Notes: a model not told the origin generated them from the letters alone. A stretch of 64,000 bases of DNA from IMGVR_UViG_3300033984_000473:124001-188000, one strand, 5' to 3'. Counted from the stretch's first letter, positions 42,942 through 58,979 are shown. A program made the numbers and translations.

Positions 42942-43001
42942 CAGAGTGATATTTTGGTTCAAATTAAAAGTTTGTTTTTGTTTACTTGCTGAAATCACTC
43001 T
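42942..43001 (-). ncRNA. anticodon-displaying stem RNA, member A (Lys UUU loop)
   Basis: AGAGTGAT/ATCACTCT stem, TTCAGCAA motif, CAAA-CTTTTAA-TTTG hairpin. Confidence 0.6.
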
Positions 43002-43010
43002 TTATCTCTG

Positions 43011-43082
43011 TTGTCCTACTAGGATTCGAACCTAGACGGACTGGCTCAAAACCAGTAATGCTAACCGTTACATTATAGGACA
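43011..43082 (-). tRNA. tRNA-Gln(TTG)
   Basis: U1-A72, ACTGG-TTTTGAG-CCAGT. Confidence 0.9.
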
Positions 43083-43088
43083 ATAATT

Positions 43089-43144
43089 CTAATTCTACGC
43101 AGACACTTACATCGTATGGGCCCCTATGAATCAGTAACAGTCTC
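43089..43144 (-). repeat. repeated structured spacer motif, copy 1 (copy 2 at 56601-56648)
   Basis: GAGACTGTTA-CTRATTC-ATAG...GCGTA-GAATTAG. Confidence 0.7.
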
Positions 43145-43150
43145 TTCTCG

Positions 43151-43238
43151 TCTAGATAACGGGACTCGAACCCGCATAATGCTTTTAAACAATTCTCGAT
43201 TCCAAATCGAGTCGGCTTCCAATTGCCTTCATATCTAG
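43151..43238 (-). tRNA. tRNA-Pro(TGG) with unusually long variable arm
   Basis: CTCGA-TTTGGAA-TCGAG; ~19-nt variable region. Confidence 0.75.
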
Positions 43239-43249
43239 TTAATTATCAG

Positions 43250-43322
43250 TCTAAATGGCAAGATTCGAACTTGCGGTCTCTACGGTCCAAGTGTAGCGGA
43301 TTTCCAACTTTCCCACATCTAG
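43250..43322 (-). tRNA. tRNA-Pro(TGG)
   Basis: CTACA-CTTGGAC-CGTAG, C1-G72, A73. Confidence 0.82.
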
Positions 43323-43337
43323 TTAATTTTTGAACAT

Positions 43338-43371
43338 AAAAAAACCCAGTCTAGATTTCTCTAACTGGGTT
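43338..43371 (-). terminator. attenuator terminator of tRNA operon 1
   Basis: AACCCAGTTAGA...TCTAGACTGGGTT followed by T-run, 16 nt before the first tRNA. Confidence 0.85.
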
Positions 43372-43397
43372 GTATAAATTAATACTTGCGTACTTTT

Positions 43398-43502
43398 CTA
43401 TCCTACAATCACATCCTTCAACATGACATACCCAGTCGTCCCGTTAGGCGTTCCGCCTTTAGGTTGATACTGTTTCGTTTGATATGTTGCTGTTGTTTTC
43501 AT
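43398..43502 (-). CDS. leader peptide 1: MKTTATYQTKQYQPKGGTPNGTTGYVMLKDVIVG
   Basis: 34 aa, translated by hand; 22 of residues 2-25 are K/T/Y/Q/P/G; contains antiterminator ACTGGGT (43430-43436). Confidence 0.75.
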   Translation of the reverse strand: MKTTATYQTKQYQPKGGTPNGTTGYVMLKDVIVG

Positions 43503-43530
43503 AATTTTTTGTTTGTTGAGTTTTACCTCG

Positions 43531-43600
43531 TTGTTTATAAATATACTCTTATTCTTAAAAGTTACACAAAGGTACTACATTTATTTTGATTTGTCAAGTT
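43531..43600 (-). promoter_or_regulatory. tRNA-operon dual promoter cassette, copy 1
   Basis: TTGAC..TACCTTTG-TGTA-ACTTTTAAGAATAAGAGT-ATATTTATAAACAA; near-identical at 58083-58152 and 60266-60334. Confidence 0.8.
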
Positions 43601-43602
43601 TT

Positions 43603-44037
43603 TTATGACTTTTTTTTAATTTTTTTTTGTTTTTTAATCTCATCCCTTATGTTTGCTGCTATTTCGTAGTCTTCATTCTCTACAGCTTCAGCTAATTTTT
43701 CATCTAATGTTTTTTCTAAGACAGGTTTTTCTGGTTTTATCGTTGTATATGGAATGTCAACCATCACCACTTTTACCAATTCACCACCAAAAGCATACCA
43801 TACTCTTTTCTCAAAATGGAAACCATCTTCTTCAAATGTCTCTATCTTGTCTGGCTCACCTAATTGCTCATCAATACTATCGATGTGTTCGATGTTATCA
43901 AGCATGTTGATAAGTCCTTTGATTTGTTCTTCTTTTTCAGCATCGAATTCTTTATTCTTAGCATCTTTTCTTAAAATCTTTTTTTTATTGTTCTTCCCTA
44001 AGAAGTCATTAAAAAGGTCGTCAAATTTATCTGTCAT
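43603..44037 (-). CDS. protein with C-terminal UvrB/UvrC (UVR) motif
   Basis: L..AVE.EDYE.AA.IRDEI. Confidence 0.75.
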   Translation of the reverse strand: MTDKFDDLFNDFLGKNNKKKILRKDAKNKEFDAEKEEQIKGLINMLDNIEHIDSIDEQLGEPDKIETFEEDGFHFEKRVWYAFGGELVKVVMVDIPYTTIKPEKPVLEKTLDEKLAEAVENEDYEIAANIRDEIKKQKKIKKKS

Positions 44038-44476
44038 TTTTTTTGATTTTATTTGTAATTTTTGTGTGCGTTTCTTTCGCATGATACTTAAACAATTCAA
44101 CTACGTTTATTCTATATAGATACATAAAAATACCAAAGAATGTTCCAGCCAAAGCATACATGATGCTCATTGTCATCCAGTAATCATTTGTTAATTGCAT
44201 GATACCATATACTACGATATCATAACCCAATGGGTTTAAAAATAACGCTAACGTTATCAATAAGTTTCCTATTGCTTGTTTTCCTATTTTAAAGAAGACA
44301 TAAGACAATAAAAATGATAGGAATGCCAACCCATAAAGAACGTGCATTGTACTCCAATAGTCGTTTGTTAACTGTGTCAGTTTGTAAACTAAAATGTCGA
44401 ACCCAAACGGGTTTAGAAAAGTCGCTATCATCAGACATGCTGTCCCTATCGCTTTTCTCGTTACTATTCTCTTCAC
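44027..44476 (-). CDS. membrane protein with internal tandem duplication
   Basis: two copies of AIG.....A.FLNP.G.DI.VY...QLTNDYW.TM...Y.LA. Confidence 0.75.
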   Translation of the reverse strand: MKRIVTRKAIGTACLMIATFLNPFGFDILVYKLTQLTNDYWSTMHVLYGLAFLSFLLSYVFFKIGKQAIGNLLITLALFLNPLGYDIVVYGIMQLTNDYWMTMSIMYALAGTFFGIFMYLYRINVVELFKYHAKETHTKITNKIKKNDR

Positions 44477-44582
44477 TATCCATTTTGTTTTATTTTAGGA
44501 CATATCCCACACTCTCAATTAAATGTACGACATCTTATTTTCTAGAACAAGGTAATGCGAATCAACTCATTACCAGTTTAAA

Positions 44583-44826: not shown

Positions 44827-45147
44827 TTACTTTAAATACTTTCTAAATGCAAAGATACTCCTGGATTTAAGATAAGTCAAGTTATTTTCGTTGGCATAAG
44901 CCTCTTTTTCAAAAGAAATATTCACATATCCAACTCGATACAACGCTATCAAATACCACACATAAAATGGTAAGATTCCCAGCTCCAATTGCTGCATTAA
45001 ATGAATCTTTTCGTGATTTATTAGCTCTGGATATATATCACTTGCATCACCTATAAATATGAAGGGAAAGAAAGCTAACCCTCTTATCCCCTCACTATTC
45101 AATACCCATTCAAAGAATCGAATGGCTCTTCTACTTACTACTATCAT
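44827..45147 (-). CDS. HExxH zinc-peptidase-like membrane protein
   Basis: FPFIF, INHEKIH..QQ.E, ISFEKEAY. Confidence 0.75.
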   Translation of the reverse strand: MIVVSRRAIRFFEWVLNSEGIRGLAFFPFIFIGDASDIYPELINHEKIHLMQQLELGILPFYVWYLIALYRVGYVNISFEKEAYANENNLTYLKSRSIFAFRKYLK

Positions 45148-45968
45148 TATGATTTAAGTAGCAATTCTTTCATGTCTTTTACCAACTCTCTATGTCCACT
45201 ACCATATGGTTCCCACGCCAACCCCATTGCTTTAAGGTCGTAGTGTTTAACTATCGTTGAATACGATGTTTCACCTTCTGGAAACCCAACAATATAAATA
45301 CTATCAGCCAATTCAGCAGCAAGTCTTAAATCGTGTGTCGAAAAAATAATCGTATTGTATTCATTGCTTTTACCAATTCTAACAAATGATTCTTTCACTT
45401 TTTCGATGTTACCAACATCCAACCCAGAGAACGGTTCATCCAAAATCATAAAGTGTTTAGATGAAAGCATTTGCTCAATGATTGCAGTTCTTTGTCTTTG
45501 ACCACCAGATAATTCACAAGAATATTTGTCTTTGTGTTCCAACAATCCCCAATCAGTTAGATACTCTTTAATCTGAGCCTCTTTTTCAGCCTTTGTAAGC
45601 GTTGATTTTCTCAAAGCATACTCACAAATCTGTGTGATGGTTTTGTGTCTAAAAAGGGTGTATTTTTGGTCTACAAACCCTATGTCGCCCTCTGACAAGT
45701 TCTTTGCATCGTCAGCAACATCGGTAGTTAAGTCACTAATAAGCATTTGACCACTTAATGGCTTCAATAAACCAGTTAGTGTTTTGAATAAGGTAGATTT
45801 ACCTCTACCAGAACGACCAATAAAAGCAATTACTTGCCCAGTTGATTCATGTCCTTGTCTTATGATGTCTTTTTCTTCAAAAGAAACATCTTTAAGGATT
45901 GTTTTTCCATCGTAACCAGCACTTAGGTCTTTAACGTATAATAACGTTTGTTCAGCTTTATAACTCAT
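45147..45968 (-). CDS. ABC transporter ATP-binding subunit (NitT/TauT-like)
   Basis: GRSGRGKST, LSGGQRQR, ILDEPFSGLD, THD. Confidence 0.92.
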   Translation of the reverse strand: MSYKAEQTLLYVKDLSAGYDGKTILKDVSFEEKDIIRQGHESTGQVIAFIGRSGRGKSTLFKTLTGLLKPLSGQMLISDLTTDVADDAKNLSEGDIGFVDQKYTLFRHKTITQICEYALRKSTLTKAEKEAQIKEYLTDWGLLEHKDKYSCELSGGQRQRTAIIEQMLSSKHFMILDEPFSGLDVGNIEKVKESFVRIGKSNEYNTIIFSTHDLRLAAELADSIYIVGFPEGETSYSTIVKHYDLKAMGLAWEPYGSGHRELVKDMKELLLKS

Positions 45969-45971
45969 AGT

Positions 45972-46742
45972 TTAGTAATTTGAATATCTAAAGATTAATT
46001 TTCTTAATTTTGTGATAATGAAGTCTAAGGTTAAACCTACAACTACGATTATGATTTGCAATGCGATTACTTTACCAGCATCACCTAACTTATCATTGTT
46101 CTTGATAAGGAATCCAAGTCCACCAGCGGCCACAAGGATAGATTCAACGGTTACAAGCATCATCCATACGATTGCCAAGTTTTGTCTAACCAACTCAAAT
46201 ACGTAGTCAATACGACCTTTGATTACAACTTCCCATAAACATTCCCATCTGCTGCAACCTAATGTCCTAGCGTGGTCGAATTCTTCTTCTGGAATATCTT
46301 TAATCATTTGCATAAGACTTGTGGTTAAGAATGTTGTCATAAAAACAACAAGAACCCAGACTTGAAGTGTTCTAGCATCATTGATAAGAATTGCAATGTA
46401 AAATGCGATACCAGTCAAAGGTAGATATCTAAGCTTAGATATGAATGTACCAACTGGTTTAAAGAAAGGAATTGCAGATGAATAAGCAAACATAAGTGAA
46501 ATCACGATGGAAATCATTACAGCTTGACTACATAACCAAATTGAACTTGCAATGTGAACGACCAACCCATCGGCCCAAAGGTCTTTTAACCCATGCAATA
46601 CTTGTAGTGGTGTTGGGAAAAGGTGAGTATCACCAAAACTGTTAAGTCCCCAAAACGTTAATAGAATTACTAACCATGATGTCAGTATTGTCGTTTTACT
46701 AGAACCTTTAAGATTCTCAAACGGTTTAAATAATCTTTTCAT
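45972..46742 (-). CDS. ABC transporter permease (NitT/TauT-like)
   Basis: FPTP, multiple TMs, EAA-like FDHARTLGCSRW, GGLG. Confidence 0.88.
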   Translation of the reverse strand: MKRLFKPFENLKGSSKTTILTSWLVILLTFWGLNSFGDTHLFPTPLQVLHGLKDLWADGLVVHIASSIWLCSQAVMISIVISLMFAYSSAIPFFKPVGTFISKLRYLPLTGIAFYIAILINDARTLQVWVLVVFMTTFLTTSLMQMIKDIPEEEFDHARTLGCSRWECLWEVVIKGRIDYVFELVRQNLAIVWMMLVTVESILVAAGGLGFLIKNNDKLGDAGKVIALQIIIVVVGLTLDFIITKLRKLIFRYSNY

Positions 46743-47190: not shown

Positions 47191-49005
47191 TTAGTTTAAC
47201 AAAGTGATTTCCACTCGTCTGTTTTTAGCTTTACCACTAGCAGTGTTGTTATTAGCTACTGGGTTAGTATCACCTTTACCATCAACCAATTGGAAACGGT
47301 CTTTAGAAATACCTCTACCAGTTAAGTAATTTACTACTGAATTAGCACGACCTTTAGATAATGATAAGTTAGAATCAGAGTTACCAACGTTATCTGTGTG
47401 ACCAACAATTCTCAATTTGGTTTGTTCAGCTTGTACTAGTAAGTTGTAGATTGCTTCTAAATCTTTTTCAGAACCAGCGATTTCTGAACTACCTGTTGCA
47501 AAGCTAATGTTCCATTGACCATCAGCCAATACTTTAGTTTTAGTGTCAGTATAAGTTATTTTATCAGCTTTACCAGAAGCAACATCAGTTACCGATTTCA
47601 AGAAGTATAAATTAACCGCATCTTCGTAAGGTACAACACCATCTTTACATGTTTCATTAAAACCACATGGGTTCAAGTCAGTCAAGTAAACCGATACTTG
47701 GTTATAAACCGCTTTGTATCTGTTGTTACCATCTGTGATTCCGTAGTATTGCATTGCATCAGCATAGTTAAACACTTTTGAACCACCGATATTGTAATCT
47801 AAACCATCTTTGGTACCTTTTTGACCTTTGAATAAATCATACCAGTATTTAGGTGTTTCAAAGTCATATGTTTTAGCAACACATTCAGATGCTTTAACAG
47901 CCCACTCATCATATTGTTTGATTTGATTAGAAGCAGTATATGTTTGTTTCAATATATTAACAACTTCTTTCTCATGTTGCAATGCCCATTCTTTAATAAC
48001 AACTAGTGTTGTTGCCATTTGGTTAACAAATTCTTTAGTTGAAACTACATCGGTGAAACCACTCAAAGCATCGAAAGCCATTTTATCACCAGGAGTCCAT
48101 GTAGTTGCCCCATCAATTTTGTGGTTAACTGTTTTACCAGTTAATTTACCATTCTCAACCACTTTTAAAGGAACAGTATAACCTGTTTTTTGTGACTTGA
48201 TAAGTTCTTTCACAGAGTTGATGTAGTCATCGTCTTGTGATGGTACGAAGTTAATCGCATTAGCATCATAAGTACTTGGGTCTGGATTCACTGGAATCTT
48301 ATTAGCAAAAGCATAGTTGATTGCAACAACCCAGTCACCATCACCGATTACAGAAGATATTACAGCACCTTTCATTGATTGTGGATTATCTTTCCAGATT
48401 TTTGGTCCGATTAATTTATCTTCACCATATGAAAGACCGTAAGCACCAATTACTTGTACGTGGTATTTACCTTTACCAAATTTTTCATCCAAAGCTTTTT
48501 GTGTAGTCGTAATATAGAACGGCACACCGTCACCCATAATACTTACACCAAACGCTGATTTATCTGATACTGGATATTGAGCACCCTTAGAGAATTCCTC
48601 AACGAATTTTAATTGCATATCACGTAACCCACCGACCATGTCTTGTCTTACGATTTCTAAGTTAACACCAGAAGCTTCCATAAGAGAACCTTGAGTTGTA
48701 CGTGGACCACCGTTAGCCACAATCATACCAGCGTTACCATTCCATGCATATTCTGCAATACGGATAAGACCTTTGTTTGCTACAGCTGTTGATGGCTGAT
48801 TAGACGGAGTTGGTAGCTTGGCACCACTCGTTACGTTGTTCAATTCATCAGTATTGATACTTAATGAAGTTAATTGCTTTGAAACAGCAACTCGTAATCC
48901 AGGTGATACGAAATAAACGATTCCTAATACGATTGCTAGACCTAATGCTAAGATTGTCCCCTCAGCTAAGGTAGTTAATTTTGGTTGTTTGAAGATTGCT
49001 CCCAT
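47191..49005 (-). CDS. membrane-anchored ABC substrate-binding-like protein with C-terminal OmpA domain
   Basis: N-terminal TM; ISFATGS, GHTD..G....N..LS..RA, N.T..G.AKNRRVEI. Confidence 0.85.
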   Translation of the reverse strand: MGAIFKQPKLTTLAEGTILALGLAIVLGIVYFVSPGLRVAVSKQLTSLSINTDELNNVTSGAKLPTPSNQPSTAVANKGLIRIAEYAWNGNAGMIVANGGPRTTQGSLMEASGVNLEIVRQDMVGGLRDMQLKFVEEFSKGAQYPVSDKSAFGVSIMGDGVPFYITTTQKALDEKFGKGKYHVQVIGAYGLSYGEDKLIGPKIWKDNPQSMKGAVISSVIGDGDWVVAINYAFANKIPVNPDPSTYDANAINFVPSQDDDYINSVKELIKSQKTGYTVPLKVVENGKLTGKTVNHKIDGATTWTPGDKMAFDALSGFTDVVSTKEFVNQMATTLVVIKEWALQHEKEVVNILKQTYTASNQIKQYDEWAVKASECVAKTYDFETPKYWYDLFKGQKGTKDGLDYNIGGSKVFNYADAMQYYGITDGNNRYKAVYNQVSVYLTDLNPCGFNETCKDGVVPYEDAVNLYFLKSVTDVASGKADKITYTDTKTKVLADGQWNISFATGSSEIAGSEKDLEAIYNLLVQAEQTKLRIVGHTDNVGNSDSNLSLSKGRANSVVNYLTGRGISKDRFQLVDGKGDTNPVANNNTASGKAKNRRVEITLLN

Positions 49006-52199: not shown

Positions 52200-52346
52200 T
52201 AGACAACAAGATTAACTTTTTTCTTTTTCGTGCTCTAACCATTAAGCTAACCGCCCAGTGTCTTAGGACAGTATGGGACTCGAACCCATATCACGAGCTT
52301 AACAGGCTATAGATTTTTTGTTGCTGAAATAATCTTTCAATGTCTA
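52200..52346 (-). ncRNA. circularly permuted tRNA-like RNA (YrlA/Y-RNA-like), member B (Asn GUU loop)
   Basis: terminal stem, TTCAGCAA, AGC-CTGTTAA-GCT, T-arm, loop-closed acceptor ACTGTCC/GGGCGGT, D-arm, AAAAAAGTTAATCTTG. Confidence 0.75.
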
Positions 52347-52390
52347 GTTACAAACTAAGCAATTTCTCACTTAGCTTATATTTTTGGGTA

Positions 52391-53026
52391 TTATTTTCCT
52401 TGTCCAGAAACGTTAATTGACCCTACTGAACCAGCTTTAGCTCTTTCGATACCAGCAGCTCTTTCAGCATCTAATTGTAAATACAATTTAGTTACTTGTT
52501 CACTTAAGAACTCGTTTTGGTTAGCCAACGTACCAATCTTAGCAGCGTTTTCAGCAGCAATAGCTTTATTCTCTGAGTGAATCAATTTGATTTCATTCTC
52601 GTATTGAGATTTAAGGCTAGAAACTACCGTAGCAACTTCTTTTTTGATTAATCCATCAGTGTTAGACTTAACCTCGTCTAACTCTTTACGCAATGAACTC
52701 AATTCACTAGCTGGAATTACTGTTTTCCCAACGCTTGTTAAGTATTCATTAACAACACGGTCTGTGTTAGCTCTGAAACTTAAATCTAAATCAACTTTCA
52801 ATTGACGCTCTTTTTCAGCAAAAGCTACATCTAATGATATAATCGCTTCTTCTTTGTTAGCAACTTGTAAAGTTAATTCTTCAGCTTGCTCAACCATTTT
52901 ATTGATTGTGTTAGTGGCAGAAGCTAATTCGCTTACTGCTTTCGTAATTTGTTGTGCAGCTTGTCCTAAGACAATCTCTGTGCTAGCACTTGCTTTCTTT
53001 GCGGGTGTTGTTTTTGTTACAGCCAT
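52391..53026 (-). CDS. coiled-coil hypothetical protein
   Basis: 211 aa, heptad-rich, own promoter. Confidence 0.75.
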   Translation of the reverse strand: MAVTKTTPAKKASASTEIVLGQAAQQITKAVSELASATNTINKMVEQAEELTLQVANKEEAIISLDVAFAEKERQLKVDLDLSFRANTDRVVNEYLTSVGKTVIPASELSSLRKELDEVKSNTDGLIKKEVATVVSSLKSQYENEIKLIHSENKAIAAENAAKIGTLANQNEFLSEQVTKLYLQLDAERAAGIERAKAGSVGSINVSGQGK

Positions 53027-53193
53027 TTTTTTTTTCTTTGTTTTTTTGTTTATTATGTTATTATGTTATTATGTTATTGTATTATTCTCTACTTATTATA
53101 CTACAAAGATACTACATTTTTCATTAAAAGTCAAGTAAAAATGAATATTTTTTTAATCTTTTTTACACTTTTAATAAGCTGTAAATCAAGCTG

Positions 53194-53556
53194 TTACCCA
53201 GCCAAATACATACTATTTGACATCAACGCATGTCTTGCAAAATCGGTCTCATCTTGGACGTATTCATTGAACTCAGATTGCTCTAATTCAACTATGTCTT
53301 CGACTTCCCAATTGAACATATCAATGATTTTGTCATAGTTATTGCTGTTGTCAACTGGTGTTGTTAAATCTAATCTAACTTTCATATCTCCAGCTTCAAC
53401 TTTTTTGGTAATGTCTGCTAATTGTTTAAGTGCTTCTTTCTTGTAAGCAACAACGGCTTTGGTATAAGCTTCAATGTGTTGTGCTTTATTTTCTTGAATC
53501 TTAGCAATTAAATCTGCTTTGTTAACCTTGATGGTTCTGTTTCCGTTTCTTCTCAT
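53194..53556 (-). CDS. hypothetical protein
   Basis: ORF in operon. Confidence 0.75.
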   Translation of the reverse strand: MRRNGNRTIKVNKADLIAKIQENKAQHIEAYTKAVVAYKKEALKQLADITKKVEAGDMKVRLDLTTPVDNSNNYDKIIDMFNWEVEDIVELEQSEFNEYVQDETDFARHALMSNSMYLAG

Positions 53557-53577
53557 TGGAATTTATTTTTACGTATG

Positions 53578-53955
53578 TTATTGTATGATATCTCCGACTT
53601 CAACATTTAAGAACAAATCCTCATCAATGTCTTTTTTAATCGTTAACGTTTCGTTAGGCCTTTTGATTGTAATGTAGTTGTCTTTTAAATCTGCTTTTTC
53701 GTTTTCTGAACGACAATTAGCACAATCTTTATTTACAACAATACCGACTGGTAATTTAGTTTCAGAACTTGACCAATAACGCTTATCAGCTACCTTAACG
53801 TCACTTTCTGTAGGTTCGTCTTGATTGCGATAATCAGAAGAATCTGAAAGGATTACAGCATCATAAGTTTCAACGTTTTCTGTTGGTTGTTCAGTTTTAG
53901 GTTTACATGAAACAGTTAAACCTAAAACCAAAGCTACTAAAAACATTTTTTTCAT
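53578..53955 (-). CDS. lipoprotein
   Basis: LTVSC lipobox. Confidence 0.75.
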   Translation of the reverse strand: MKKMFLVALVLGLTVSCKPKTEQPTENVETYDAVILSDSSDYRNQDEPTESDVKVADKRYWSSSETKLPVGIVVNKDCANCRSENEKADLKDNYITIKRPNETLTIKKDIDEDLFLNVEVGDIIQ

Positions 53956-54128
53956 TATGTTCTACTTTTTAGAACTTCAATTTCTTTGTTGATTCTTTTG
54001 ATATCAGAATCATTCAAAGGAACTTTAACGTCAGTTGTTTTCTTTTGTGTTTTCACACCACTTTTTAATTGCTTCTCAAGCATTTCGATTACTCTAGACT
54101 GTCTAGAACGTTTTGCAGCTGTTGCCAT
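53955..54128 (-). CDS. hypothetical basic protein (57 aa, not in ORF track)
   Basis: MATAAKRSRQSRVIEMLEKQLKSG...EIEVLKSRT. Confidence 0.65.
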   Translation of the reverse strand: MATAAKRSRQSRVIEMLEKQLKSGVKTQKKTTDVKVPLNDSDIKRINKEIEVLKSRT

Positions 54129-54147
54129 AGTTAAATTTATTTATTTG

Positions 54148-54252
54148 TAGATGGTACAGGATTCGAACCTGTGAATCTCTTTGTATAGGTATCATACATA
54201 CCACATCAAGACTTTATGTATGCTCAACCTTAAGCCACTCGGTCAACCGTCT
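54148..54252 (-). ncRNA. tRNA-like RNA with extended anticodon arm and no canonical anticodon loop
   Basis: acceptor AGACGGT/ACCATCT, D-loop GAGTGGCTTAA, CATACATA/TATGTATG stem, T-arm ACAGG-TTCGAAT-CCTGT. Confidence 0.55.
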
Positions 54253-54376
54253 ATTTAATGAGAATTTGGGCCATCGGTATCTCATAATTGTTAGTCCTTC
54301 CTTAGCTAACACCCTTACCCAAGCCGTTCCTATGGGCTGGTAAATTTCACTATACTATAGGAGTCAAGTGAATACT

Positions 54377-54452
54377 TGGTGGTACCGAGTGGATTCGAAC
54401 CACTGACACCCGCATCTTCAGTGCGGTGCTCTACCAACTGAGCTACGGTACC
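54377..54452 (-). tRNA. tRNA-Phe(GAA) with encoded CCA
   Basis: CCGCA-CTGAAGA-TGCGG. Confidence 0.93.
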
Positions 54453-54596
54453 TTTTTATCTCGTAGTTTTTAAGGCTCAAGTGATTACATTGCTGCTCAC
54501 TCTAAGTAACCGTGATATAGTACAAACCTATGATATTTCTATACTACAAAGATACTAATCTTTTTTTAAAGTTGCAACCTTTGTATCGTTTTTTTT

Positions 54597-55082
54597 TTAA
54601 CTTTTTCTAGCTAAAATATACTCATATTGTGAGTCAGTATTTGTATTGCCATATACATAGTTTGGAATTCTAGTTAAACACATGTCTTCTAGAACTTTAT
54701 CCAATGGACAACCTTCACCATATTCAAAATAGATAGCACCATATTCAACATAGCTCTCATCAGAATCAAAAGCTTCAACTTCGTTGATATCTCTAACATT
54801 TATGTTTTCATCACTGATAACACAAATTGATTCATAACCTTTTCTATATTTAAAAGCACCTATTTGCTCAAATAACCCTTTACCAATTATGTATTCATCT
54901 TCTTTTGATAAATCTGGAACTACAACCATGTATTCACATTCCAATAAGTCTTTGTGACTATATAGACCACCTTTGAATTCAACTGTTTGTATATTAAATT
55001 GGTTAAGGATTTGGCGAACTCTAGTAACCACATCTGGGTTAGCTCTATTAGACTTCGCCAAATAAACCTTTGGTATGTTCAT
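54597..55082 (-). CDS. hypothetical protein
   Basis: ORF in operon. Confidence 0.7.
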   Translation of the reverse strand: MNIPKVYLAKSNRANPDVVTRVRQILNQFNIQTVEFKGGLYSHKDLLECEYMVVVPDLSKEDEYIIGKGLFEQIGAFKYRKGYESICVISDENINVRDINEVEAFDSDESYVEYGAIYFEYGEGCPLDKVLEDMCLTRIPNYVYGNTNTDSQYEYILARKS

Positions 55083-55429
55083 TATTTCTTACCTTTGGTA
55101 GCTGGAGCCTCGTCAGCAAACCATTCATCATAGATTGATTGTGCTTCCACAAGTTGAACTTCTTTCAAAGCTAAATCCATTTTTGTTCTGTGTAATTCAG
55201 CCACCCATTTAGCAGCGTTGAAATCAGCACCACCTGGACGTAGAGAGTAAGTGTTCTCTGGAGCCAAGTCAGTCAAGTCATTTAACTTGCTATTCAATTG
55301 CAATTTCTCTTTTCTTAGGTTTGCGATGAAAGACTCAACTTCCAATACGGCAGCATCTGCTAAATTTTTCGCTCTGTTTCCTAATGTTGCTGAACTATCC
55401 GCTGATAGCATTTGTGCAAATTTACTCAT
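55082..55429 (-). CDS. hypothetical protein
   Basis: ORF behind a promoter box. Confidence 0.75.
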   Translation of the reverse strand: MSKFAQMLSADSSATLGNRAKNLADAAVLEVESFIANLRKEKLQLNSKLNDLTDLAPENTYSLRPGGADFNAAKWVAELHRTKMDLALKEVQLVEAQSIYDEWFADEAPATKGKK

Positions 55430-55526
55430 AATTTTCTAGTTTTAAATTAAATTGTTTTTGTTTATTTTTTAGATTACAAAGGTATGAAATGTTTTTGACC
55501 TGTGCAAGTTTTTTTTAAAGTTTTTT

Positions 55527-55682
55527 TTAGTCGAGGTAAATATCAAACCATTCAACAGCGTAGAAGTCTAACCACATTCCCATTTCTAAATAGAATTGGA
55601 AAATTCTCTCGTCTCCACCGATTTCCATACGTAGTTTCTCTATGATGTAATCGGCCATGTATTGTAATATCTTTCTTTTCAT
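55527..55682 (-). CDS. hypothetical protein (51 aa, not in ORF track)
   Basis: MKRKILQYMADYIIEKL...FDIYLD; ATG lies 4 nt after the TAnnTTTG box, so possibly near-leaderless. Confidence 0.55.
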   Translation of the reverse strand: MKRKILQYMADYIIEKLRMEIGGDERIFQFYLEMGMWLDFYAVEWFDIYLD

Positions 55683-55709
55683 AATACAAAGGTACTAATT
55701 AGTTTTTTA

Positions 55710-56087
55710 TTATCCAAACAATGTGTTGTGTTTTTTTGAAAATTTTTTAGCAATTCTTTTATAAAACTCTGTTAGTAGCGAACTAGGAATCTTAATCCCT
55801 TCATCTTCAAATATATCCAAGATTTCTTTAGGTGTAAACGTTCCTTCAACAATACCATCTGACCATTGGTCACTCCAAAGTCCCCAAGACTTTTTACCTA
55901 CAATAACAGCTTTTACTATATTAGGGTGTCTTGATACTATTGGGACTCCATTTCTAAAATCTCCATTGTCAAATTTTCTGAATGTGAATTTTCCTTCTGT
56001 TTCGTTGACATCAAATTCAACCTTTACGATAGCACCACAAAAAGATAGGATGCCTTTCCTATTTGATTTAAGGAAGAAGTTGAACAT
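55710..56087 (-). CDS. hypothetical protein
   Basis: ORF; the frame stays open 36 codons further upstream. Confidence 0.6.
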   Translation of the reverse strand: MFNFFLKSNRKGILSFCGAIVKVEFDVNETEGKFTFRKFDNGDFRNGVPIVSRHPNIVKAVIVGKKSWGLWSDQWSDGIVEGTFTPKEILDIFEDEGIKIPSSLLTEFYKRIAKKFSKKHNTLFG

Positions 56088-56238
56088 TTCATTGAAATTA
56101 TCGGAATACTTGGTTAGCTTTTTTTGATGTCTGCTACCAGTTTCCTTTTTACGTAACTCTATACGTTCTTGTCTTGTTAACGGGCTCCCAAGCGGTCACC
56201 CCCATTTTGTGTGTTTTTCATAACATTTATATTTGTTG

Positions 56239-56311
56239 TTGAGGAAGAGGGACTTGAACCCTACTCTACCACCCGTCTAGGTGGTCTTCTAACCAGTTAA
56301 AGTATTCCCCA
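56239..56311 (-). tRNA. atypical tRNA with 6-nt anticodon loop (TAGACG; Val-like or undetermined)
   Basis: acceptor TGGGGAA/TTCCTCA, D- and T-arms present, CCACC/GGTGG stem. Confidence 0.5.
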
Positions 56312-56400
56312 AAATTACCAGAGGTTGCCAGATAGAATTTATAATACCTGTGTTTTCAACCTTTCTCCGTAAATAAAATTACCAGAAGTTACCAGATTTG

Positions 56401-56519
56401 CAGCGGCACCAGGAATCGAACCTAGAACAATGGCGTGACAGGCTATATTGAATGCTGAACGTAATCTTCTTAATCAGATTAACTTTTTTAACATTGTTAT
56501 ACCATTTAACTATACCGCT
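56401..56519 (-). ncRNA. tRNA-Asp-like RNA with the Y-like module inserted in the anticodon arm, member C
   Basis: AGCGGTA/TGCCGCT acceptor, G73, D and T arms; insert AAAAAAGTTAATCT-loop-AGATTACGTTCAGCA-...-GC-CTGTCAC-GC. Confidence 0.7.
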
Positions 56520-56521
56520 AG

Positions 56522-56594
56522 TGGAGCCACGGAGATTCGAACTCCGTTCTGCTGGGTGCAAGCCAACTATTTTCGCCCAGTAAACTATGACCCC
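56522..56594 (-). tRNA. tRNA-Ala(TGC)
   Basis: GTTGG-CTTGCAC-CCAGC; G3:U70 identity pair. Confidence 0.88.
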
Positions 56595-56600
56595 AATTTT

Positions 56601-56648
56601 CTAATTCTACGCTTACAATATGTAGTTCTATGAATTAGTAACAGTCTC
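56601..56648 (-). repeat. repeated structured spacer motif, copy 2
   Basis: GAGACTGTTA-CTAATTC-ATAG...GCGTA-GAATTAG. Confidence 0.7.
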
Positions 56649-56659
56649 ATCTGTAACTA

Positions 56660-57298
56660 TTATTCTCTACCTTGAAACCATCCTTGTAATAGGTAATTTT
56701 CAAGTTCTTCTTTTTTAATCTTTTTGTTAATACTATCTTTGGTTATCCAACATGTACCATATTGGCTATTTGTCTTACCAGTTCCAGTACCCTTTTTCTT
56801 TTCAGACATCAATTTTTTAGTTTCTTCTGAATGATTTCTATCATTCCAATCGAACCTTTTTATTTTACCAGTTAACAACATATTTGTCATATGTGTTGAA
56901 GCTTTATCTCTATGTATTTTAGCAAATTCTTCATCATTTTTTAATTTGTCAGCAAAAGCTTTTCCAGCACAAACTGAACGATGTTTTTGTTGTTCATCGC
57001 TGATAAAACCACCACTTCCACCACCCATTAAATTCATACAGTTTTTATCTGTTATCATTTCTGGTGTGATAGTTTTTATCTCAGCTTCAACCAACAATTC
57101 TCTTGTTTCAAAGAACTCTAAAATTTCTTTATTGAAATTCTCAATCCCATACTTACGCATTGAAGCTCTTAATCTTCTACCGCTACCTAAGTAACCATCA
57201 TTTATGTCATTCGTACTATGCATCCCTACATAATATCTTCCTGTTACATTACATGTTGTTTTATACAAATAATGTATTGTTTTTTCTTTTCTTGTCAT
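56660..57298 (-). mobile_element. GIY-YIG homing endonuclease (Seg-like, NUMOD3) inside tRNA operon 2
   Basis: YLYKTT...G.YYVGMH, YLGSG, YG..NF.KEIL, HSEETK..MS; own ATATTTAT promoter. Confidence 0.87.
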
Positions 57299-57350
57299 TG
57301 TCGTATATCTTTTATTATAAATATACGACAAAGTACAAAAAAGTCAAGGG

Positions 57351-57422
57351 CGGTCTATGAGAGAATCGAACTCTCATCTCTACCGTGACAGGGTAGCATC
57401 CTAGCCGTTGAACGAATAGACC
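57351..57422 (-). tRNA. tRNA-Asp(GTC)
   Basis: CTACC-CTGTCAC-GGTAG, G73. Confidence 0.9.
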
Positions 57423-57431
57423 TTATATTTG

Positions 57432-57503
57432 TAGCCCGTAGGGGAGTTGAACCCCTCTTTCTAGGTTGAAAACCGAGCGTCCTTACCGATAGACGAACGG
57501 GCC
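57432..57503 (-). tRNA. tRNA-Glu(TTC)
   Basis: CTCGG-TTTTCAA-CCTAG. Confidence 0.87.
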
Positions 57504-57511
57504 ATTTTTTG

Positions 57512-57584
57512 CGGAACACACGGGAGTCGAACCCGCAATCTCTTAAGTGACAGTCAAGGATGTTACCATCAACACCTCTGTTCC
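57512..57584 (-). tRNA. tRNA-Asp(GTC), divergent
   Basis: CTTGA-CTGTCAC-TTAAG, G73. Confidence 0.85.
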
Positions 57585-57678
57585 AATTTAGAGTTTCTTT
57601 CCACTCTCAAGTCAACGATGTCTATTATTTCCCCTAGTTACTGTGCCGACCATCGCATTTGCACACGTTCTTTAATTG

Positions 57679-57751
57679 TACTACCAACGGGATTCGAACC
57701 CGTGTTTTACCCGTGAAAGGGGCACGTCCTTACCGACTAGACGATGGTAGC
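57679..57751 (-). tRNA. tRNA-Glu(TTC)
   Basis: TGCCC-CTTTCAC-GGGTA. Confidence 0.9.
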
Positions 57752-57815
57752 ATAGGTGTCCCGTCACTCGTGCACGAGCCATGGCATTACGGGACCGATG
57801 TTTTTCCATATTCTG

Positions 57816-57888
57816 TGGTTCCAGTGGGGCTCGAACCCACGACACCTAGAGCTTCAATCTAGTGCTCTACCAACTGAGCTACAGAACC
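57816..57888 (-). tRNA. tRNA-Phe(GAA)
   Basis: CTAGA-TTGAAGC-TCTAG. Confidence 0.92.
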
Positions 57889-57904
57889 AATTATTTTATT
57901 GCAT

Positions 57905-57934
57905 AAAAAAAGTCTGACTTATTAGGTCAGACTT
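57905..57934 (-). terminator. attenuator terminator of tRNA operon 2
   Basis: AAGTCTGAC-CTAATAA-GTCAGACTT plus T-run, 16 nt before tRNA-Phe. Confidence 0.85.
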
Positions 57935-57959
57935 ATCATTTTGTTAGATTAACTACTCG

Positions 57960-58049
57960 TTAACTTATGACAGTGTTTGACCTTCCGAAAGAGTAATCCT
58001 CTTCGGCTGCGAAAAATGCGATATCAAATATGTTAGTTAATGTTCTCAT
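57960..58049 (-). CDS. leader peptide 2: MRTLTNIFDIAFFAAEEDYSFGRSNTVIS
   Basis: 29 aa; 11 of residues 8-21 are F/D/E/A; antiterminator AGGTCAAAC (57975-57983). Confidence 0.75.
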   Translation of the reverse strand: MRTLTNIFDIAFFAAEEDYSFGRSNTVIS

Positions 58050-58082
58050 AGTTTTTTATTTTTGTGGGTTTCCCCTTTTTGT

Positions 58083-58152
58083 TTGTTTATAAATATACTC
58101 TTATTCTTAAAAGTTATACAAAGGTACTACTTTTTTTAATACAAGTCAAGTT
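58083..58152 (-). promoter_or_regulatory. tRNA-operon dual promoter cassette, copy 2
   Basis: near-identical to 43531-43600. Confidence 0.8.
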
Positions 58153-58156
58153 TTTT

Positions 58157-58474
58157 TTAATCTTTTTTTAATATTTTTTGTAACTTCCTAAGTGTCAGCA
58201 GTTCTAATAATACGTCACCATGACATTTTTCTGGCTTACAGAAGCAACCTAGTGTCTTACCTTCTAATTCATCTAGGGATTCCATCAACTCTGGGCTAGC
58301 CAATACATATTCTTTGTACTTAGATAATGCTTCTTCTTTTGAATCCACTATTTCTTTTGCCAGTGTTGGTCTATCTTTGATTATCGTATAAGGACAACCC
58401 CATTTGGAACCTCTACCTATATAAACATCGAAAGCTTCATCTTTCATGTTAACAATCTTGGTTATATTACTCAT
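58157..58474 (-). CDS. DUF4326 family protein
   Basis: DVYIGRGSKWG.P, L.GK.LGCFC.P..CHGDVL. Confidence 0.88.
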   Translation of the reverse strand: MSNITKIVNMKDEAFDVYIGRGSKWGCPYTIIKDRPTLAKEIVDSKEEALSKYKEYVLASPELMESLDELEGKTLGCFCKPEKCHGDVLLELLTLRKLQKILKKD

Positions 58475-58754
58475 CTTTAAAAATTTTATCTTTAAATCTC
58501 CAGTACCAACCTTTTAAGCCACTAGATACTCTATCATCTTCTTCAGCACAGAAACTTTCAAAAGGTCTTACTTTTAAGTCTAACCATAATTTGCTAGTTG
58601 CTACATTCAAACTAGGATATTTTTTAAATGAATCATCGTAACGCTCTTCATATTCTTTATAATTAGTAAAAATATGAAAATCATTTCGTAACGCTACTTG
58701 TGTTACCATATAATGAATCCAAATCTTATATTTATCATCTTCGCTAAACTCCAT
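58467..58754 (-). CDS. hypothetical protein
   Basis: ORF behind a promoter box. Confidence 0.65.
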   Translation of the reverse strand: MEFSEDDKYKIWIHYMVTQVALRNDFHIFTNYKEYEERYDDSFKKYPSLNVATSKLWLDLKVRPFESFCAEEDDRVSSGLKGWYWRFKDKIFKDE

Positions 58755-58809
58755 TGTTTATTTTTTTTACAAAGGTACAATTAAAAAATGACAATAGCAA
58801 ATATATTTG

Positions 58810-58893
58810 TGACCAAGGTGAGACTCGAACTCACACTCCCTAATGGGAACCAGCTTCTTAGACTGGCGGGTCTACCAATTCCCCCACTCGGCC
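58810..58893 (-). tRNA. tRNA-Leu(AAG)
   Basis: CCAGT-CTAAGAA-GCTGG, long variable arm, A73. Confidence 0.87.
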
Positions 58894-58898
58894 AAATA

Positions 58899-58979
58899 CA
58901 AGATAGTTTTGTGGGATTGAACCACTTAGTTTTGTGTATGAGACAAAATTTTAACCGTTTTGTTTGCAGTAACTATCTT
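58899..58979 (-). ncRNA. anticodon-displaying stem RNA, member D (CAU loop plus T-arm)
   Basis: AAGATAGT/ACTATCTT stem, TACTGCAA, TTTTGT-CTCATAC-ACAAAA, GTGG-TTCAATC-CCAC. Confidence 0.65.

What the first reader, a model, noticed from the sequence alone, without database searches (positions are those of the whole stretch)
42942..58979. Family of four stem-TTCAGCA RNAs, each displaying a different anticodon loop
Members A (42942-43001, Lys UUU), B (Asn GUU), C (Asp GUC) and D (58899-58979, CAU plus a T-arm) share an AAGA-started stem followed by T(T/A)C(A/T)GCA, an A-rich linker, a 7-nt CT-NNN anticodon-like loop, and a closing arm ending TCT(T)G. Stem sequences differ but stay paired. A, C and D lie inside the attenuated operons. 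Established: tRNA-Lys(UUU), tRNA-fMet and GUN-anticodon tRNAs are targets of PrrC, VapC and colicin E5-type nucleases. Inference: these RNAs are decoys or sensors for anticodon nucleases, or scaffolds for an RNA-repair protein.
Basis: partly seen in the sequence, partly recalled or inferred. Interest (0 to 1): 0.75.

Follow-up and report, generated by a model that had tools for sequence, protein, structure and literature searches.

The report
Phage small RNAs displaying tRNA parts
The four elements are real members of a large, apparently undescribed family of jumbo-phage small RNAs: a conserved stem-plus-UU(A)CAGCAA "handle", strikingly like the enigmatic Class I RNAs of Dictyostelium, carries pieces of tRNA (an anticodon hairpin, a T arm, or a whole circularly permuted tRNA), but what they do has not been shown.

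Summary
All four elements lie on the minus strand inside tRNA arrays of a freshwater jumbo phage (233-kb IMG/VR record).

- **The shared module.** It is a 6-9 bp helix with conserved ends (5' AAG ... CU(U)G(U) 3'). The motif U(U/A/G)C(A/U)GCAA follows the 5' strand, and an A-rich stretch precedes the 3' strand.
- **The helix covaries.** In 65 homologues it is 95% paired, and every pair shows compensatory changes.
- **The cargo differs.** A carries only a tRNA-Lys-like anticodon hairpin, and D carries an anticodon hairpin plus a T arm. B is a complete circularly permuted tRNA-like cloverleaf. C is a tRNA-Asp whose anticodon stem is interrupted by the same module folded as a hairpin.
- **The family is large.** I found at least 151 distinct members in 85 loci fetched from phage contigs. 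None turned up in the bacterial genomes searched.
- **Closest known relatives.** Rfam's Dictyostelium Class I RNA model hits five short members at 22-36 bits, below its threshold of 41.5, and every RNA-intrinsic Class I feature is shared. B also has the topology of bacterial Y RNA (YrlA), but no Ro60, RtcB, splicing endonuclease or RRM gene is present.
- **Function is inferred, not shown.** I favour a protein-binding handle that displays tRNA mimics to tRNA-directed enzymes, for example as anticodon-nuclease decoys. The main rival is a maturation pathway for split or permuted tRNAs.

The parts
42942..43001 (-). Member A (short type). Handle 5' strand AGAGUGAU is at 42994-43001 and the motif UUCAGCAA at 42986-42993. 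The Lys-like anticodon hairpin CAAA-CUUUUAA-UUUG is at 42960-42974. The handle 3' strand AUCACUCU is at 42943-42950, followed by G at 42942. A lies 9 nt after tRNA-Gln and 9 nt before tRNA-Tyr.
   Evidence: Sequence. It scores 74.8 bits with model R1 and 70.5 bits with R2. There are 22 distinct orthologues, and all 8 helix pairs show compensatory changes.
52205..52339 (-). Member B, a circularly permuted tRNA-like RNA. In order along the RNA:
- handle 5' strand AAGAUUA, 52330-52336
- motif UUUCAGCAA, 52321-52329
- anticodon hairpin AGC-CUGUUAA-GCU, 52296-52308 (anticodon GUU at 52301-52303)
- T arm, 52273-52289
- acceptor stem closed by a 9-nt loop, 52250-52272
- D arm, 52232-52247
- A-rich stretch
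- handle 3' strand UAAUCUU, 52208-52214
   Evidence: Sequence. It scores 38.4 bits with R2, E = 1.3e-5. RNAalifold on 20 orthologues predicts all five helices on its own, and 19 of 26 pairs have compensatory changes. It gives a weak YrlA hit of 24.7 bits. Orthologues sit in the same place after the 211-aa gene.
56401..56519 (-). Member C, a tRNA-Asp(GUC) carrying the handle as an internal hairpin.
- The 48-nt insertion is at 56444-56491 and splits the 5' strand of the anticodon stem after position 29.
- The hairpin UAAUCU / AGAUUA is at 56462-56481.
- The motif GUUCAGCAU is at 56452-56460.
- The anticodon is at 56437-56439.
- The acceptor ends are open, and G73, G10 and C38 are kept.
   Evidence: Rfam tRNA hit of 42.3 bits covering model positions 1-71 in 119 nt. 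Sequence. Homologous interrupted tRNAs occur in other phages, with covarying hairpins and loops that always read G...AA(A).
58899..58979 (-). Member D. Handle 5' strand AAGAUAGU is at 58972-58979 and the motif UACUGCAA at 58964-58971. After an A-rich linker with a GG come the anticodon hairpin UUUUGU-CUCAUAC-ACAAAA (CAU) and the T arm GUGG-UUCAAUC-CCAC. The handle 3' strand ACUAUCUU is at 58900-58907, followed by G at 58899. D lies 4 nt after tRNA-Val and 6 nt before tRNA-Leu.
   Evidence: Sequence. It scores 43.2 bits with R2, E = 1.2e-6. Orthologues in G001, G002 and L011 have covarying T stems and different anticodons.

Best explanation
A-D belong to one family of phage small RNAs that are transcribed within tRNA arrays and built from two modules.

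**Module 1, the handle.** It is a short helix whose outer end reads 5' AAG ... CU(U)G(U) 3'. That outer end is either the RNA's two termini or, in C, is closed by a loop. The inner end runs into the single-stranded motif UU(A)CAGCAA on one strand and an A-rich stretch on the other.

**Module 2, the cargo.** It is a piece of tRNA: an anticodon hairpin alone (A), a hairpin plus T arm (D), a whole cloverleaf with its acceptor stem closed by a loop (B), or a normal tRNA in which the handle sits in the anticodon stem (C).

**What is shown.** The architecture, its conservation and covariation, its restriction to phage tRNA arrays among what was searched, and its close likeness to Dictyostelium Class I RNAs.

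**What is inferred.**
- The handle is a binding or processing site for a protein that is still unknown.
- The cargo works as a tRNA mimic that is not used in decoding.
- Released from the array by the processing of the neighbouring tRNAs, these RNAs would present anticodon loops or tRNA elbows to tRNA-directed enzymes during infection.
- Most plausibly they act as decoys or sponges for host anticodon nucleases and other tRNA-targeting defences. This is the modular logic of Y RNAs, in which a protein-binding stem is joined to a tRNA-like domain.

My confidence is about 0.9 in the family and its architecture, and about 0.3 in the decoy or adaptor function.
For: **Family and helix**
- The four hits compare with 0.17 expected by chance.
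- The closing helix is 95% paired with compensatory changes at all 8 pairs in 18 A-type sequences and again in 65 sequences. No shuffle out of 500 reached the observed covariation, and slid registers pair only 35-45%.
- Models R1 and R2 recognise the different types across each other.

**Breadth**
- The A-type pattern hits 30 IMG/VR contigs, and the pattern for T-arm-bearing members hits 113 stretches of IMG/VR contigs.
- There are 151 distinct members in 85 loci. The AAG / CU(U)G ends emerged although they were not imposed in the search.
- Some contigs carry several copies.

**Cargo is tRNA-like**
- In B-type RNAs the T arm, acceptor hairpin, D arm and the split anticodon stem all covary.
- C retains the tRNA-Asp identity nucleotides.

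**Not needed for decoding**
- Lys UUU, Asn GUU, Asp GUC and Met CAU all have two or three canonical copies in the same genome.

**Loop selected, stem free**
- CUUUUAA is kept over the stems UCAAA/UUUGA, UUGA/UCAA, UUUGA/UCAAA and UAUC/GAUA.

**Likeness to Class I RNAs**
- RF01414 hits five short members end to end at 22-36 bits.
- The shared features are listed in PMC7919456 and can be seen in its sequences.

**Expression**
- Freshwater metatranscriptome contigs cover B exactly, at higher depth than the neighbouring gene.
Against: - No partner protein was identified. Ro60, RtcB, RRM and splicing-endonuclease genes are absent, and no protein is a universal neighbour of the elements.
- Many members lack an anticodon hairpin, so an anticodon decoy cannot be the function of the whole family.
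- C keeps everything a working tRNA-Asp needs, which fits a real tRNA as well as a mimic.
- No data bear on mature ends, cleavage or binding. The RNA evidence consists only of assembled contigs, and it could include DNA carry-over.
- Single-sequence folding energies are only modestly better than shuffles, with z from -0.7 to -2.2.
- The host is unknown, so no specific nuclease can be named.
Confidence: 0.4

Rival explanations
1. The elements are tRNA maturation intermediates. In this reading the handle is an intron-like or processing element. C would be spliced to a normal tRNA-Asp. B would be a permuted gene that is joined at the handle and opened at the acceptor loop, as in Cyanidioschyzon. 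The phage RNA ligase would do the joining.
For: - B has the 3' half before the 5' half with a complete, covarying cloverleaf.
- C keeps the Asp identity elements and open acceptor ends.
- The two parts of the split anticodon stem covary (CG/CG changes to CU/AG).
- The genome has other tRNAs with 23-50 nt insertions in the anticodon loop.
- An RNA ligase gene of family PF09414 is present in G000, G001, G002 and G004.
Against: - There is no splicing endonuclease or RtcB, and no bulge-helix-bulge motif is visible around the junctions.
- The insertion point varies (26/27, 28/29, 29/30), and so does the distance from the handle to the junction.
- A, D, E and F have no acceptor stem and can never become tRNAs.
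- Acceptor loops in B orthologues are as short as 4-6 nt, and discriminator bases are inconsistent.
- The anticodon changes between orthologues while the rest is kept.
- The anticodons are redundant with canonical copies.
- No spliced or circular joint was seen, although that evidence is weak.
Confidence: 0.2
2. The elements are processing or stability punctuation of the tRNA operon. The handle would be a nuclease entry site or a protective structure that helps cut or stabilise the polycistronic tRNA transcript, and the cargo would be incidental.
For: - The elements sit 2-10 nt from neighbouring tRNAs and are always on the same strand.
- The helix ends are conserved, as expected of a cleavage signal.
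Against: - In C-type RNAs the same 'ends' are enclosed in a hairpin loop inside a tRNA.
- The cargo is itself conserved and covaries (T arms, acceptor hairpins, the Lys loop).
- Most tRNA junctions in the arrays have no such element.
Confidence: 0.1
3. The elements are neutral debris: decaying tRNA pseudogenes and rearrangement scars made by recombination driven by homing endonucleases in the arrays.
For: - GIY-YIG endonuclease genes lie inside the arrays and are the commonest neighbours of the elements.
- Cargo ranges from a whole tRNA down to almost nothing.
Against: - Orthologous elements are kept at the same positions in phages whose anchor protein is only 59-79% identical.
- Compensatory changes are massive.
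- The 8-nt motif and the helix ends are conserved in 151 members.
Confidence: 0.05
4. The elements are bacterial-type Y RNAs (YrlA) that work with a Ro60 (Rsr) protein.
For: - B has the YrlA topology: the ends pair, and the tRNA-like domain has a closed acceptor stem.
- B gives a weak RF02553 hit of 24.7 bits.
Against: - The score is far below the gathering score of 69.
- The handle sequence differs from the Ro-binding helix.
- There is no TROVE gene in this record or in two complete relatives of 362 and 368 kb.
Confidence: 0.03

Closest known systems
Class I RNAs of dictyostelid social amoebae (Rfam RF01414; Kjellin et al. 2021, PMC7919456)
   Same: - Length is about 60 nt in the short types.
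- A short helix joins the 5' and 3' ends, with structure conserved rather than sequence.
- A single-stranded motif directly follows the 5' strand: CUUACAGCAA in Dictyostelium, UU(A)CAGCAA here.
- An A-rich stretch precedes the 3' strand.
- The start is AAG and the end CUG(U), with the G paired to the C.
- Both are multi-copy in a genome, and the rest of the RNA is variable.
- A few members in each carry large cargo.
- RF01414 aligns five phage elements end to end at 22-36 bits.
   Different: - The scores are below Rfam's gathering score of 41.5.
- The A and D types are not hit by the Rfam model.
- The phage RNAs lie in phage tRNA arrays, not behind a DUSE promoter.
- Their cargo is recognisably tRNA-derived.
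- The module also occurs as an internal hairpin.
- The phages have no RRM gene.
- Class I RNAs were reported as unique to Dictyostelia.
YrlA, the bacterial Y RNA with a tRNA-like domain (Rfam RF02553; Chen et al. 2014, PMC4201824)
   Same: Both have a modular design: a terminal protein-binding helix plus a tRNA-like domain made of a T arm, D arm and an acceptor stem closed by a loop. That is the same permuted topology as B and many of its relatives.
   Different: - The helix has a different sequence.
- No Ro60 or RtcB gene is nearby or anywhere in complete relatives.
- Many phage members keep an anticodon hairpin, which YrlA lacks.
- Short members have no tRNA-like domain at all.
Circularly permuted and intron-containing tRNA genes of Cyanidioschyzon merolae and some archaea (from my own knowledge; the literature search found no phage case)
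   Same: In B the 3' half of the tRNA is encoded upstream of the 5' half. In C the same sequence element occupies the corresponding position as an insertion. That is the pairing seen between permuted junctions and intron positions in those organisms.
   Different: - There is no bulge-helix-bulge motif and no splicing endonuclease.
- The junction lies in the anticodon-stem 5' strand at a variable position.
- The anticodons are redundant with canonical tRNAs.
- Most family members cannot yield a tRNA.
Phage tRNAs that counter tRNA-cleaving defences such as PrrC and PARIS (established background, not a sequence family)
   Same: The genomic setting is the same (phage tRNA arrays). The anticodons displayed are ones that known anticodon nucleases target: Lys UUU, the GUN family and CAU.
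   Different: Those are complete, chargeable tRNAs that replace cleaved host tRNAs. Most of the elements here cannot be charged and would have to act as mimics.

Membership tests
Dictyostelium Class I RNA (RF01414) | Infernal score at or above the Rfam gathering score of 41.5 bits | tested here: not met
   The best phage element scores 36.1 bits (E-type, outside the window). The others score 33.4, 29.7, 25.2 and 22.2. A and D gave no hit at E <= 10. The authors' own candidate cut-off of 25 bits is passed by four elements.
Dictyostelium Class I RNA (RF01414) | Short helix joining the 5' and 3' ends, kept by compensatory changes | tested here: met
   The helix is 95% paired, and all 8 pairs show changes on both sides in 65 sequences. 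The same holds in 18 A-type sequences.
Dictyostelium Class I RNA (RF01414) | Conserved motif of about 11 nt (CUUACAGCAA) directly after the 5' strand of the helix | tested here: met
   Among 151 members the motif is TTCAGCAA in 100, TACAGCAA in 31, TCAGCAA in 8, TGCAGCAA in 7 and TACTGCAA in 4. E-type elements read GUUACAGCAAUU.
Dictyostelium Class I RNA (RF01414) | Conserved start AAG and end CUGU, with the C paired to the 5' G | tested here: met
   The commonest ends among hits that were not selected on them are AA|AAG and AA|AGA at the 5' side and CTT|GT, TCT|GT and CTT|GA at the 3' side. The feature is described.
Dictyostelium Class I RNA (RF01414) | DUSE promoter about 60 nt upstream, as an independent gene | tested here: not met
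   The elements lie 2-10 nt from flanking tRNAs in phage arrays. A eukaryotic promoter is not applicable.
Dictyostelium Class I RNA (RF01414) | Bound by the RRM protein Rnp1A | not testable with these tools
   No RRM_1 domain is encoded in G000-G004. Host proteins are unknown.
YrlA / Y RNA (RF02553) | Ro60 (TROVE) gene in the genome, usually adjacent | tested here: not met
   PF05731 is absent from G000 and from G001-G004, which include two complete genomes.
YrlA / Y RNA (RF02553) | Match to the family model, including the Ro-binding helix | tested here: not met
   The score is 24.7 bits against a gathering score of 69, and only the tRNA-like part aligns.
YrlA / Y RNA (RF02553) | tRNA-like domain with T arm, D arm and an acceptor stem closed by a loop | tested here: met
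   Met for B and its orthologues. Not met for A and D.
Circularly permuted tRNA gene (Cyanidioschyzon or archaeal type) | 3' half encoded upstream of the 5' half, together forming a full cloverleaf | tested here: met
   Shown for B.
Circularly permuted tRNA gene (Cyanidioschyzon or archaeal type) | Bulge-helix-bulge motif at the termini, and a splicing endonuclease to cut it | tested here: not met
   No such motif is visible around the junctions. PF01974 is absent.
Circularly permuted tRNA gene (Cyanidioschyzon or archaeal type) | Circular intermediate and a mature, chargeable tRNA | tested here: inconclusive
   Only assembled metatranscriptome contigs were available. No circular or spliced joint was seen, and C was not covered.

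The most novel reading that the evidence does not exclude
The stem-UU(A)CAGCAA handle may be an RNA module shared between bacteriophages and dictyostelid amoebae, either by descent or transfer or by convergence on one conserved binding partner.

On this reading, jumbo phages use the handle to display interchangeable tRNA parts (anticodon loops, elbows, whole permuted tRNAs). These would serve as decoys or adaptors against tRNA-targeting immunity.

That would give the first relatives of Class I RNAs outside Dictyostelia, the first functional clue for them (tRNA biology), and the first circularly permuted tRNA-like genes in a virus of bacteria.
Probability: 0.25. Interest if true: 0.9.

Novelty: new variant of a known kind. 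Interest (0 to 1): 0.8.

Why it matters
- **Phage tRNA arrays hold more than tRNAs.** They are now seen as counter-measures to tRNA-cleaving defences. This family suggests the arrays also encode a second class of products: tRNA mimics on a common handle.
- **An unexplained RNA class gains relatives.** Class I RNAs of Dictyostelium are abundant, affect development and have had no known mechanism for twenty years. They were reported as unique to that group. Close look-alikes fused to tRNA parts in phages would give a testable hypothesis about what the handle binds.
- **Permuted and interrupted tRNA genes in a phage.** They occur here without the archaeal or eukaryotic splicing enzymes. Either there is an unknown RNA-processing route or they are a new kind of tRNA mimicry.
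- **The system is tractable.** The RNAs are short and the motifs sharp, and there are already dozens of natural variants.

Tried and rejected
**Protein partners sought and not found**
- The archaeal-type tRNA splicing endonuclease (PF01974) is absent.
- RRM proteins like the Class I binder are absent.
- I looked for a conserved neighbouring protein by running tblastn with all window ORFs against 141 loci fetched only by RNA patterns. Nothing is universal. The top hits are homing-endonuclease-like genes. I therefore did not run a complex prediction, for want of a candidate.

**RNA-level checks**
- Known Rfam families gave only tRNA, a weak YrlA hit and sub-threshold Dicty_Class_I hits. No ribozyme or riboswitch model matched.
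- From memory I compared the motif with hammerhead, twister, pistol, hairpin, K-turn, T-loop and GNRA signatures. None fits. These are recollections, not tests.

**Read evidence**
- Four runs were laid on 51950-57900. They were contigs only.
- B is covered and C is not, and no informative joints were seen.

**Searches in bacteria**
- The A-type pattern in 185,579 species genomes gave 4 chance hits inside ORFs, with no helix.
- Model R2 found nothing in 155 bacterial genomes (151 of them Bacteroidota), but only 32-150 candidates per genome were scored, so this is a weak test.

**Literature**
- Searches for permuted tRNAs in phages, tRNA introns in huge phages, anticodon-nuclease decoys and the motif string found no description of this family.

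Full report
**Setting.** The window is bases 124001-188000 of a 232,931-bp IMG/VR virus record estimated to be about 64% complete. It has 34% G+C, and nearly all genes are on the minus strand. Sequencing runs place the phage in lake and freshwater metagenomes. ARAGORN and Rfam find 26-28 tRNAs in the window and about 50 in the record, all on the minus strand and clustered in arrays.

**The observation.** Read 5' to 3' on the minus strand, the four elements are as follows.
- **A (42942-43001):** AGAGUGAU-UUCAGCAA-11 nt-CAAA CUUUUAA UUUG-9 nt-AUCACUCU-G.
- **D (58899-58979):** AAGAUAGU-UACUGCAA-linker-UUUUGU CUCAUAC ACAAAA-CUAA-GUGG UUCAAUC CCAC-AAA-ACUAUCUU-G.
- **B:** its motif is at 52321-52329 and its helix closes 129 nt (52208-52336). 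Between the strands lie an anticodon hairpin (GUU), a T arm, the acceptor 3' strand, a 9-nt loop, the acceptor 5' strand and a D arm. B is therefore a circularly permuted tRNA-like gene.
- **C:** its motif is at 56452-56460, inside a 119-nt sequence that Rfam aligns to the whole tRNA model (42.3 bits). The acceptor stem, D arm, T arm and a GUC loop with C38 and G73 are all in place. A 48-nt insertion splits the 5' strand of the anticodon stem (AUG | insertion | GC, pairing with GC CAU). The insertion contains the A-rich stretch, a hairpin UAAUCU/AGAUUA, and GUUCAGCAU.

B and C share the strings AAAAAAGUUAAUCU and AAGAUUA(C/U)(G/U)UUCAGCA. C is thus the same module with its two 'ends' joined by a loop.

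Against chance, the combined signature (motif, helix of at least 7 bp, AAG/CUG ends) occurs 4 times in the window, against a mean of 0.17 and a maximum of 2 in 100 dinucleotide shuffles.

**More members in the genome and in relatives.**
- The same record has members E (G000 220752-220814) and F (220978-221025) next to further tRNAs, and a 235-nt RNA closed by the same handle at 221113-221347.
- I used the 211-aa protein upstream of B as an anchor. Seventeen related jumbo-phage loci were fetched, with protein identity of 59-98% and contigs up to 368 kb.
- Most carry a B orthologue at the same position, and often a second permuted tRNA-like gene about 40 nt further on.
- The two complete relatives, G001 (362 kb) and G002 (368 kb), each carry A, B, D and E-type orthologues plus a large-cargo member.

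**Breadth.**
- A pattern specific for the A type hits 30 IMG/VR contigs, giving 22 distinct sequences.
- A pattern for handle plus T arm hits 113 stretches on contigs of 4-425 kb.
- In all the DNA fetched there are 151 distinct members in 85 loci with the AAG...CU(U)G signature. I had not imposed that signature in the search that found them.
- Motif variants are UUCAGCAA (100), UACAGCAA (31), UCAGCAA (8), UGCAGCAA (7) and UACUGCAA (4).
- The A-type pattern finds only four chance matches inside ORFs in 185,579 bacterial and archaeal species genomes.
- A covariance model finds nothing in 155 bacterial genomes. That is a weak test, because few candidates were scored per genome.

**Structure.**
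- In 18 A-type sequences all eight helix pairs show changes on both sides, and 95% of cells pair. Slid registers pair only 35-45%.
- Model R1, built from those sequences, also finds D, E and F types.
- In the resulting 65-sequence alignment the helix is again 95% paired, with a covariation score of 0.62 against 0.20 for shuffles (0 of 500 reached it). That alignment is fitted to the model, which favours the structure, but the MAFFT-based result is independent of it.
- Model R2, which models the helix only, was run on the window with filters off. It scores A at 70.5, D at 43.2 and B at 38.4 bits, and nothing else scores above 16.
- For 20 B-type orthologues RNAalifold predicts, unaided, the closing helix, a 3-bp anticodon stem, the T arm, a 7-bp acceptor hairpin and the D arm. 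Of 26 pairs, 19 are kept through double changes.
- The two nucleotides after the D arm pair with the two after the anticodon hairpin and covary (CG/CG in most, CU/AG in L129 and L130). A full anticodon stem therefore forms across the break.
- Single-sequence folding is only modestly better than shuffles, with z from -0.7 to -2.2. The case rests on comparison between sequences.

**C-type relatives.** Interrupted tRNAs with the handle as a hairpin occur in many contigs, with anticodons GUC, UUC, CUC, GUU and GUA. The hairpin stems covary: UAAUCU/AGAUUA, GUCAUCUU/AAGAUGAU, CUACUCU/AGAGUAG, ACAUUCU/AGAAUGU. The loops always begin with G and end with AA(A), so the CUG(U) and AAAG 'termini' are retained inside a loop. 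The insertion point varies between 26/27, 28/29 and 29/30.

**Cargo.** Across the family the cargo takes one of five forms:
- an anticodon hairpin alone
- a hairpin plus T arm
- a T arm plus acceptor hairpin plus D arm, with no anticodon hairpin
- a full permuted cloverleaf
- an A/U-rich stretch with no evident structure

About half of the members with a T arm have no detectable anticodon hairpin.

Anticodons differ between orthologues. B is GUU in most, UUU in L012, and absent in L009. D is CAU, CAU, CGA or UAA. C is GUC here and UUC in L014.

In contrast, the Lys loop CUUUUAA of the A type is kept while its stem changes by compensation, in members found without requiring the hairpin.

The four anticodons in the window duplicate canonical tRNAs of the same genome.

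**Comparison with known families.** Rfam offers three matches.
- **tRNA:** this matches C only.
- **YrlA:** B scores 24.7 bits against a gathering score of 69. B shares YrlA's topology, but there is no TROVE gene in this record or in complete relatives, and no RtcB.
- **Dicty_Class_I_RNA (RF01414):** it aligns five short elements from three phage genomes end to end at 36.1, 33.4, 29.7, 25.2 and 22.2 bits (gathering score 41.5). The best E-value is 4.4e-5 to 7e-4, depending on the search space.

The paper that defines Class I RNAs lists their features (PMC7919456):
- 42-65 nt long
- a short end-joining stem kept by compensatory changes
- an unstructured 11-nt motif next to the 5' strand
- a conserved start AAG and end CUGU, with the C paired to the 5' G
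- a variable remainder
- many gene copies
- binding by the RRM protein Rnp1A
- no homologues found outside Dictyostelia

The D. discoideum sequences read GUUGAC-CUUACAGCAA-...-AAGAAAACC..-GUCAAC-UG. Phage element E reads (AA)AGAAUAG-UUACAGCAA-...-GAAAAACCAUG-CUAUUCU-G.

Every RNA-intrinsic feature is shared. The promoter context is not, the partner protein cannot be tested, and the phages encode no RRM domain. I therefore call the handle 'Class I-like' without filing the elements as members of that family.

**Mechanism.** What is shown is a conserved two-module RNA in phage tRNA operons. What follows is inference.

The conserved single-stranded motif and helix ends look like a protein recognition or processing site. 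They keep their sequence whether they are true termini or a closed loop, which argues for recognition of the structure rather than of free ends.

The cargo looks like tRNA mimicry rather than decoding capacity, for three reasons: the anticodons are redundant, the acceptor stems are closed or absent, and the Lys loop is conserved while its stem covaries. Phage tRNA arrays are widely thought to offset tRNA-cleaving defences, which is background knowledge. On that basis I favour the view that these RNAs present tRNA parts to tRNA-directed enzymes as decoys, sponges or adaptors. My confidence in this is about 0.3.

The main rival, at about 0.2, is a maturation route for interrupted and permuted tRNAs using the phage RNA ligase.
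- For it: C's intact identity set, and other insertion-bearing tRNAs in the genome.
- Against it: no endonuclease gene, variable junctions, members that cannot become tRNAs, and very short acceptor loops.

**Read evidence.** Logan contigs of three freshwater metatranscriptomes and one DNA run were laid on 51950-57900. In one RNA run, B and the adjacent insertion-bearing tRNA are covered without mismatch at word depth of about 100-190, against about 55 for the next bin. C has no coverage. No spliced or circular joint appears. Contigs cannot show small-RNA ends, and RNA libraries can hold DNA, so this shows at most that the region is present in RNA libraries.

**Verdict.** The finding is real. 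Its function is open.

Noticed in passing
window 51994-52110 (-): A tRNA (Rfam 54 bits, 117 nt) has an insertion of about 44-50 nt at the 3' side of the anticodon loop. The insertion contains a T-arm-like hairpin (AAGG UUCGAUU CCUU) and ends in AUGACGUA. The same arrangement is conserved downstream of the B orthologues in L009 and L012, with other apparent anticodons. This is a second class of interrupted tRNA, unlike the handle.
   Followed up: partly
G000 76875-77003, 120528-120627, 120902-121001 (outside the window); window 40294-40389: Several further tRNAs of 95-129 nt carry predicted 23-34 nt insertions in the anticodon loop (ARAGORN with introns allowed). One has a UUA (ochre-reading) anticodon, and a CUA (amber-reading) tRNA lies at G000 218099-218172. 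This may hint at stop-codon reading, which I did not examine.
   Followed up: no
G000 221113-221347 (outside the window); G001 58124-58322; G002 218565-218759: RNAs of 195-235 nt are closed by the same handle (UUCUGCAA variant) and have shared flanks (UCUAGA ... GAGAUA). The large cargo matches no Rfam family. Two Dictyostelium Class I RNAs (DdR-66 and DdR-67) likewise carry large cargo.
   Followed up: partly
window 42380-42480 (-): A spacer of about 100 nt between tRNA-Thr and tRNA-Gly is closed by AGUAGGA/UCCUACU. It contains GUGCAGCAAUG and two internal hairpins. Model R2 does not recognise it, so it may be a different structured RNA.
   Followed up: no
window 56238-56311 (-): A tRNA-like gene (Rfam 39.6 bits) for which ARAGORN reports an 8-nt anticodon loop with a four-base anticodon (agac).
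   Followed up: no
window 40442-41056 (-) and 56660-57331 (-); also 43603-44100 (-): GIY-YIG homing-endonuclease-like genes and a UVR-motif protein sit inside the tRNA arrays. Their relatives are the commonest neighbours of handle RNAs in other phages (20-23 of 141 loci).
   Followed up: partly
window 61994-63223 (-), 37618-38181 (-), 63289-63996 (-): The window encodes an RlaP-family nucleotidyltransferase (RNA repair pathway, 82 bits), a 2H phosphoesterase of LigT/Acb1 type, and an Acb3-like anti-CBASS protein. An RNA ligase gene (PF09414) lies at G000 194552-194863. None is linked to the RNAs by adjacency across phages.
   Followed up: partly
G000 about 222294-222653 (L059 5795-6154, -), outside the window: A tmRNA-like sequence scores 44.4 bits, just under the gathering score of 47 (E = 4e-15).
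   Followed up: no
window 45147-46742 (-), 47191-49005 (-): An ABC-transporter ATPase and permease pair and a 604-aa OmpA-domain protein are encoded between the tRNA arrays. These are unusual cargo for a phage.
   Followed up: no
window 42572-42645 (-): Rfam calls a tRNA here (38.9 bits) that ARAGORN does not report.
   Followed up: no
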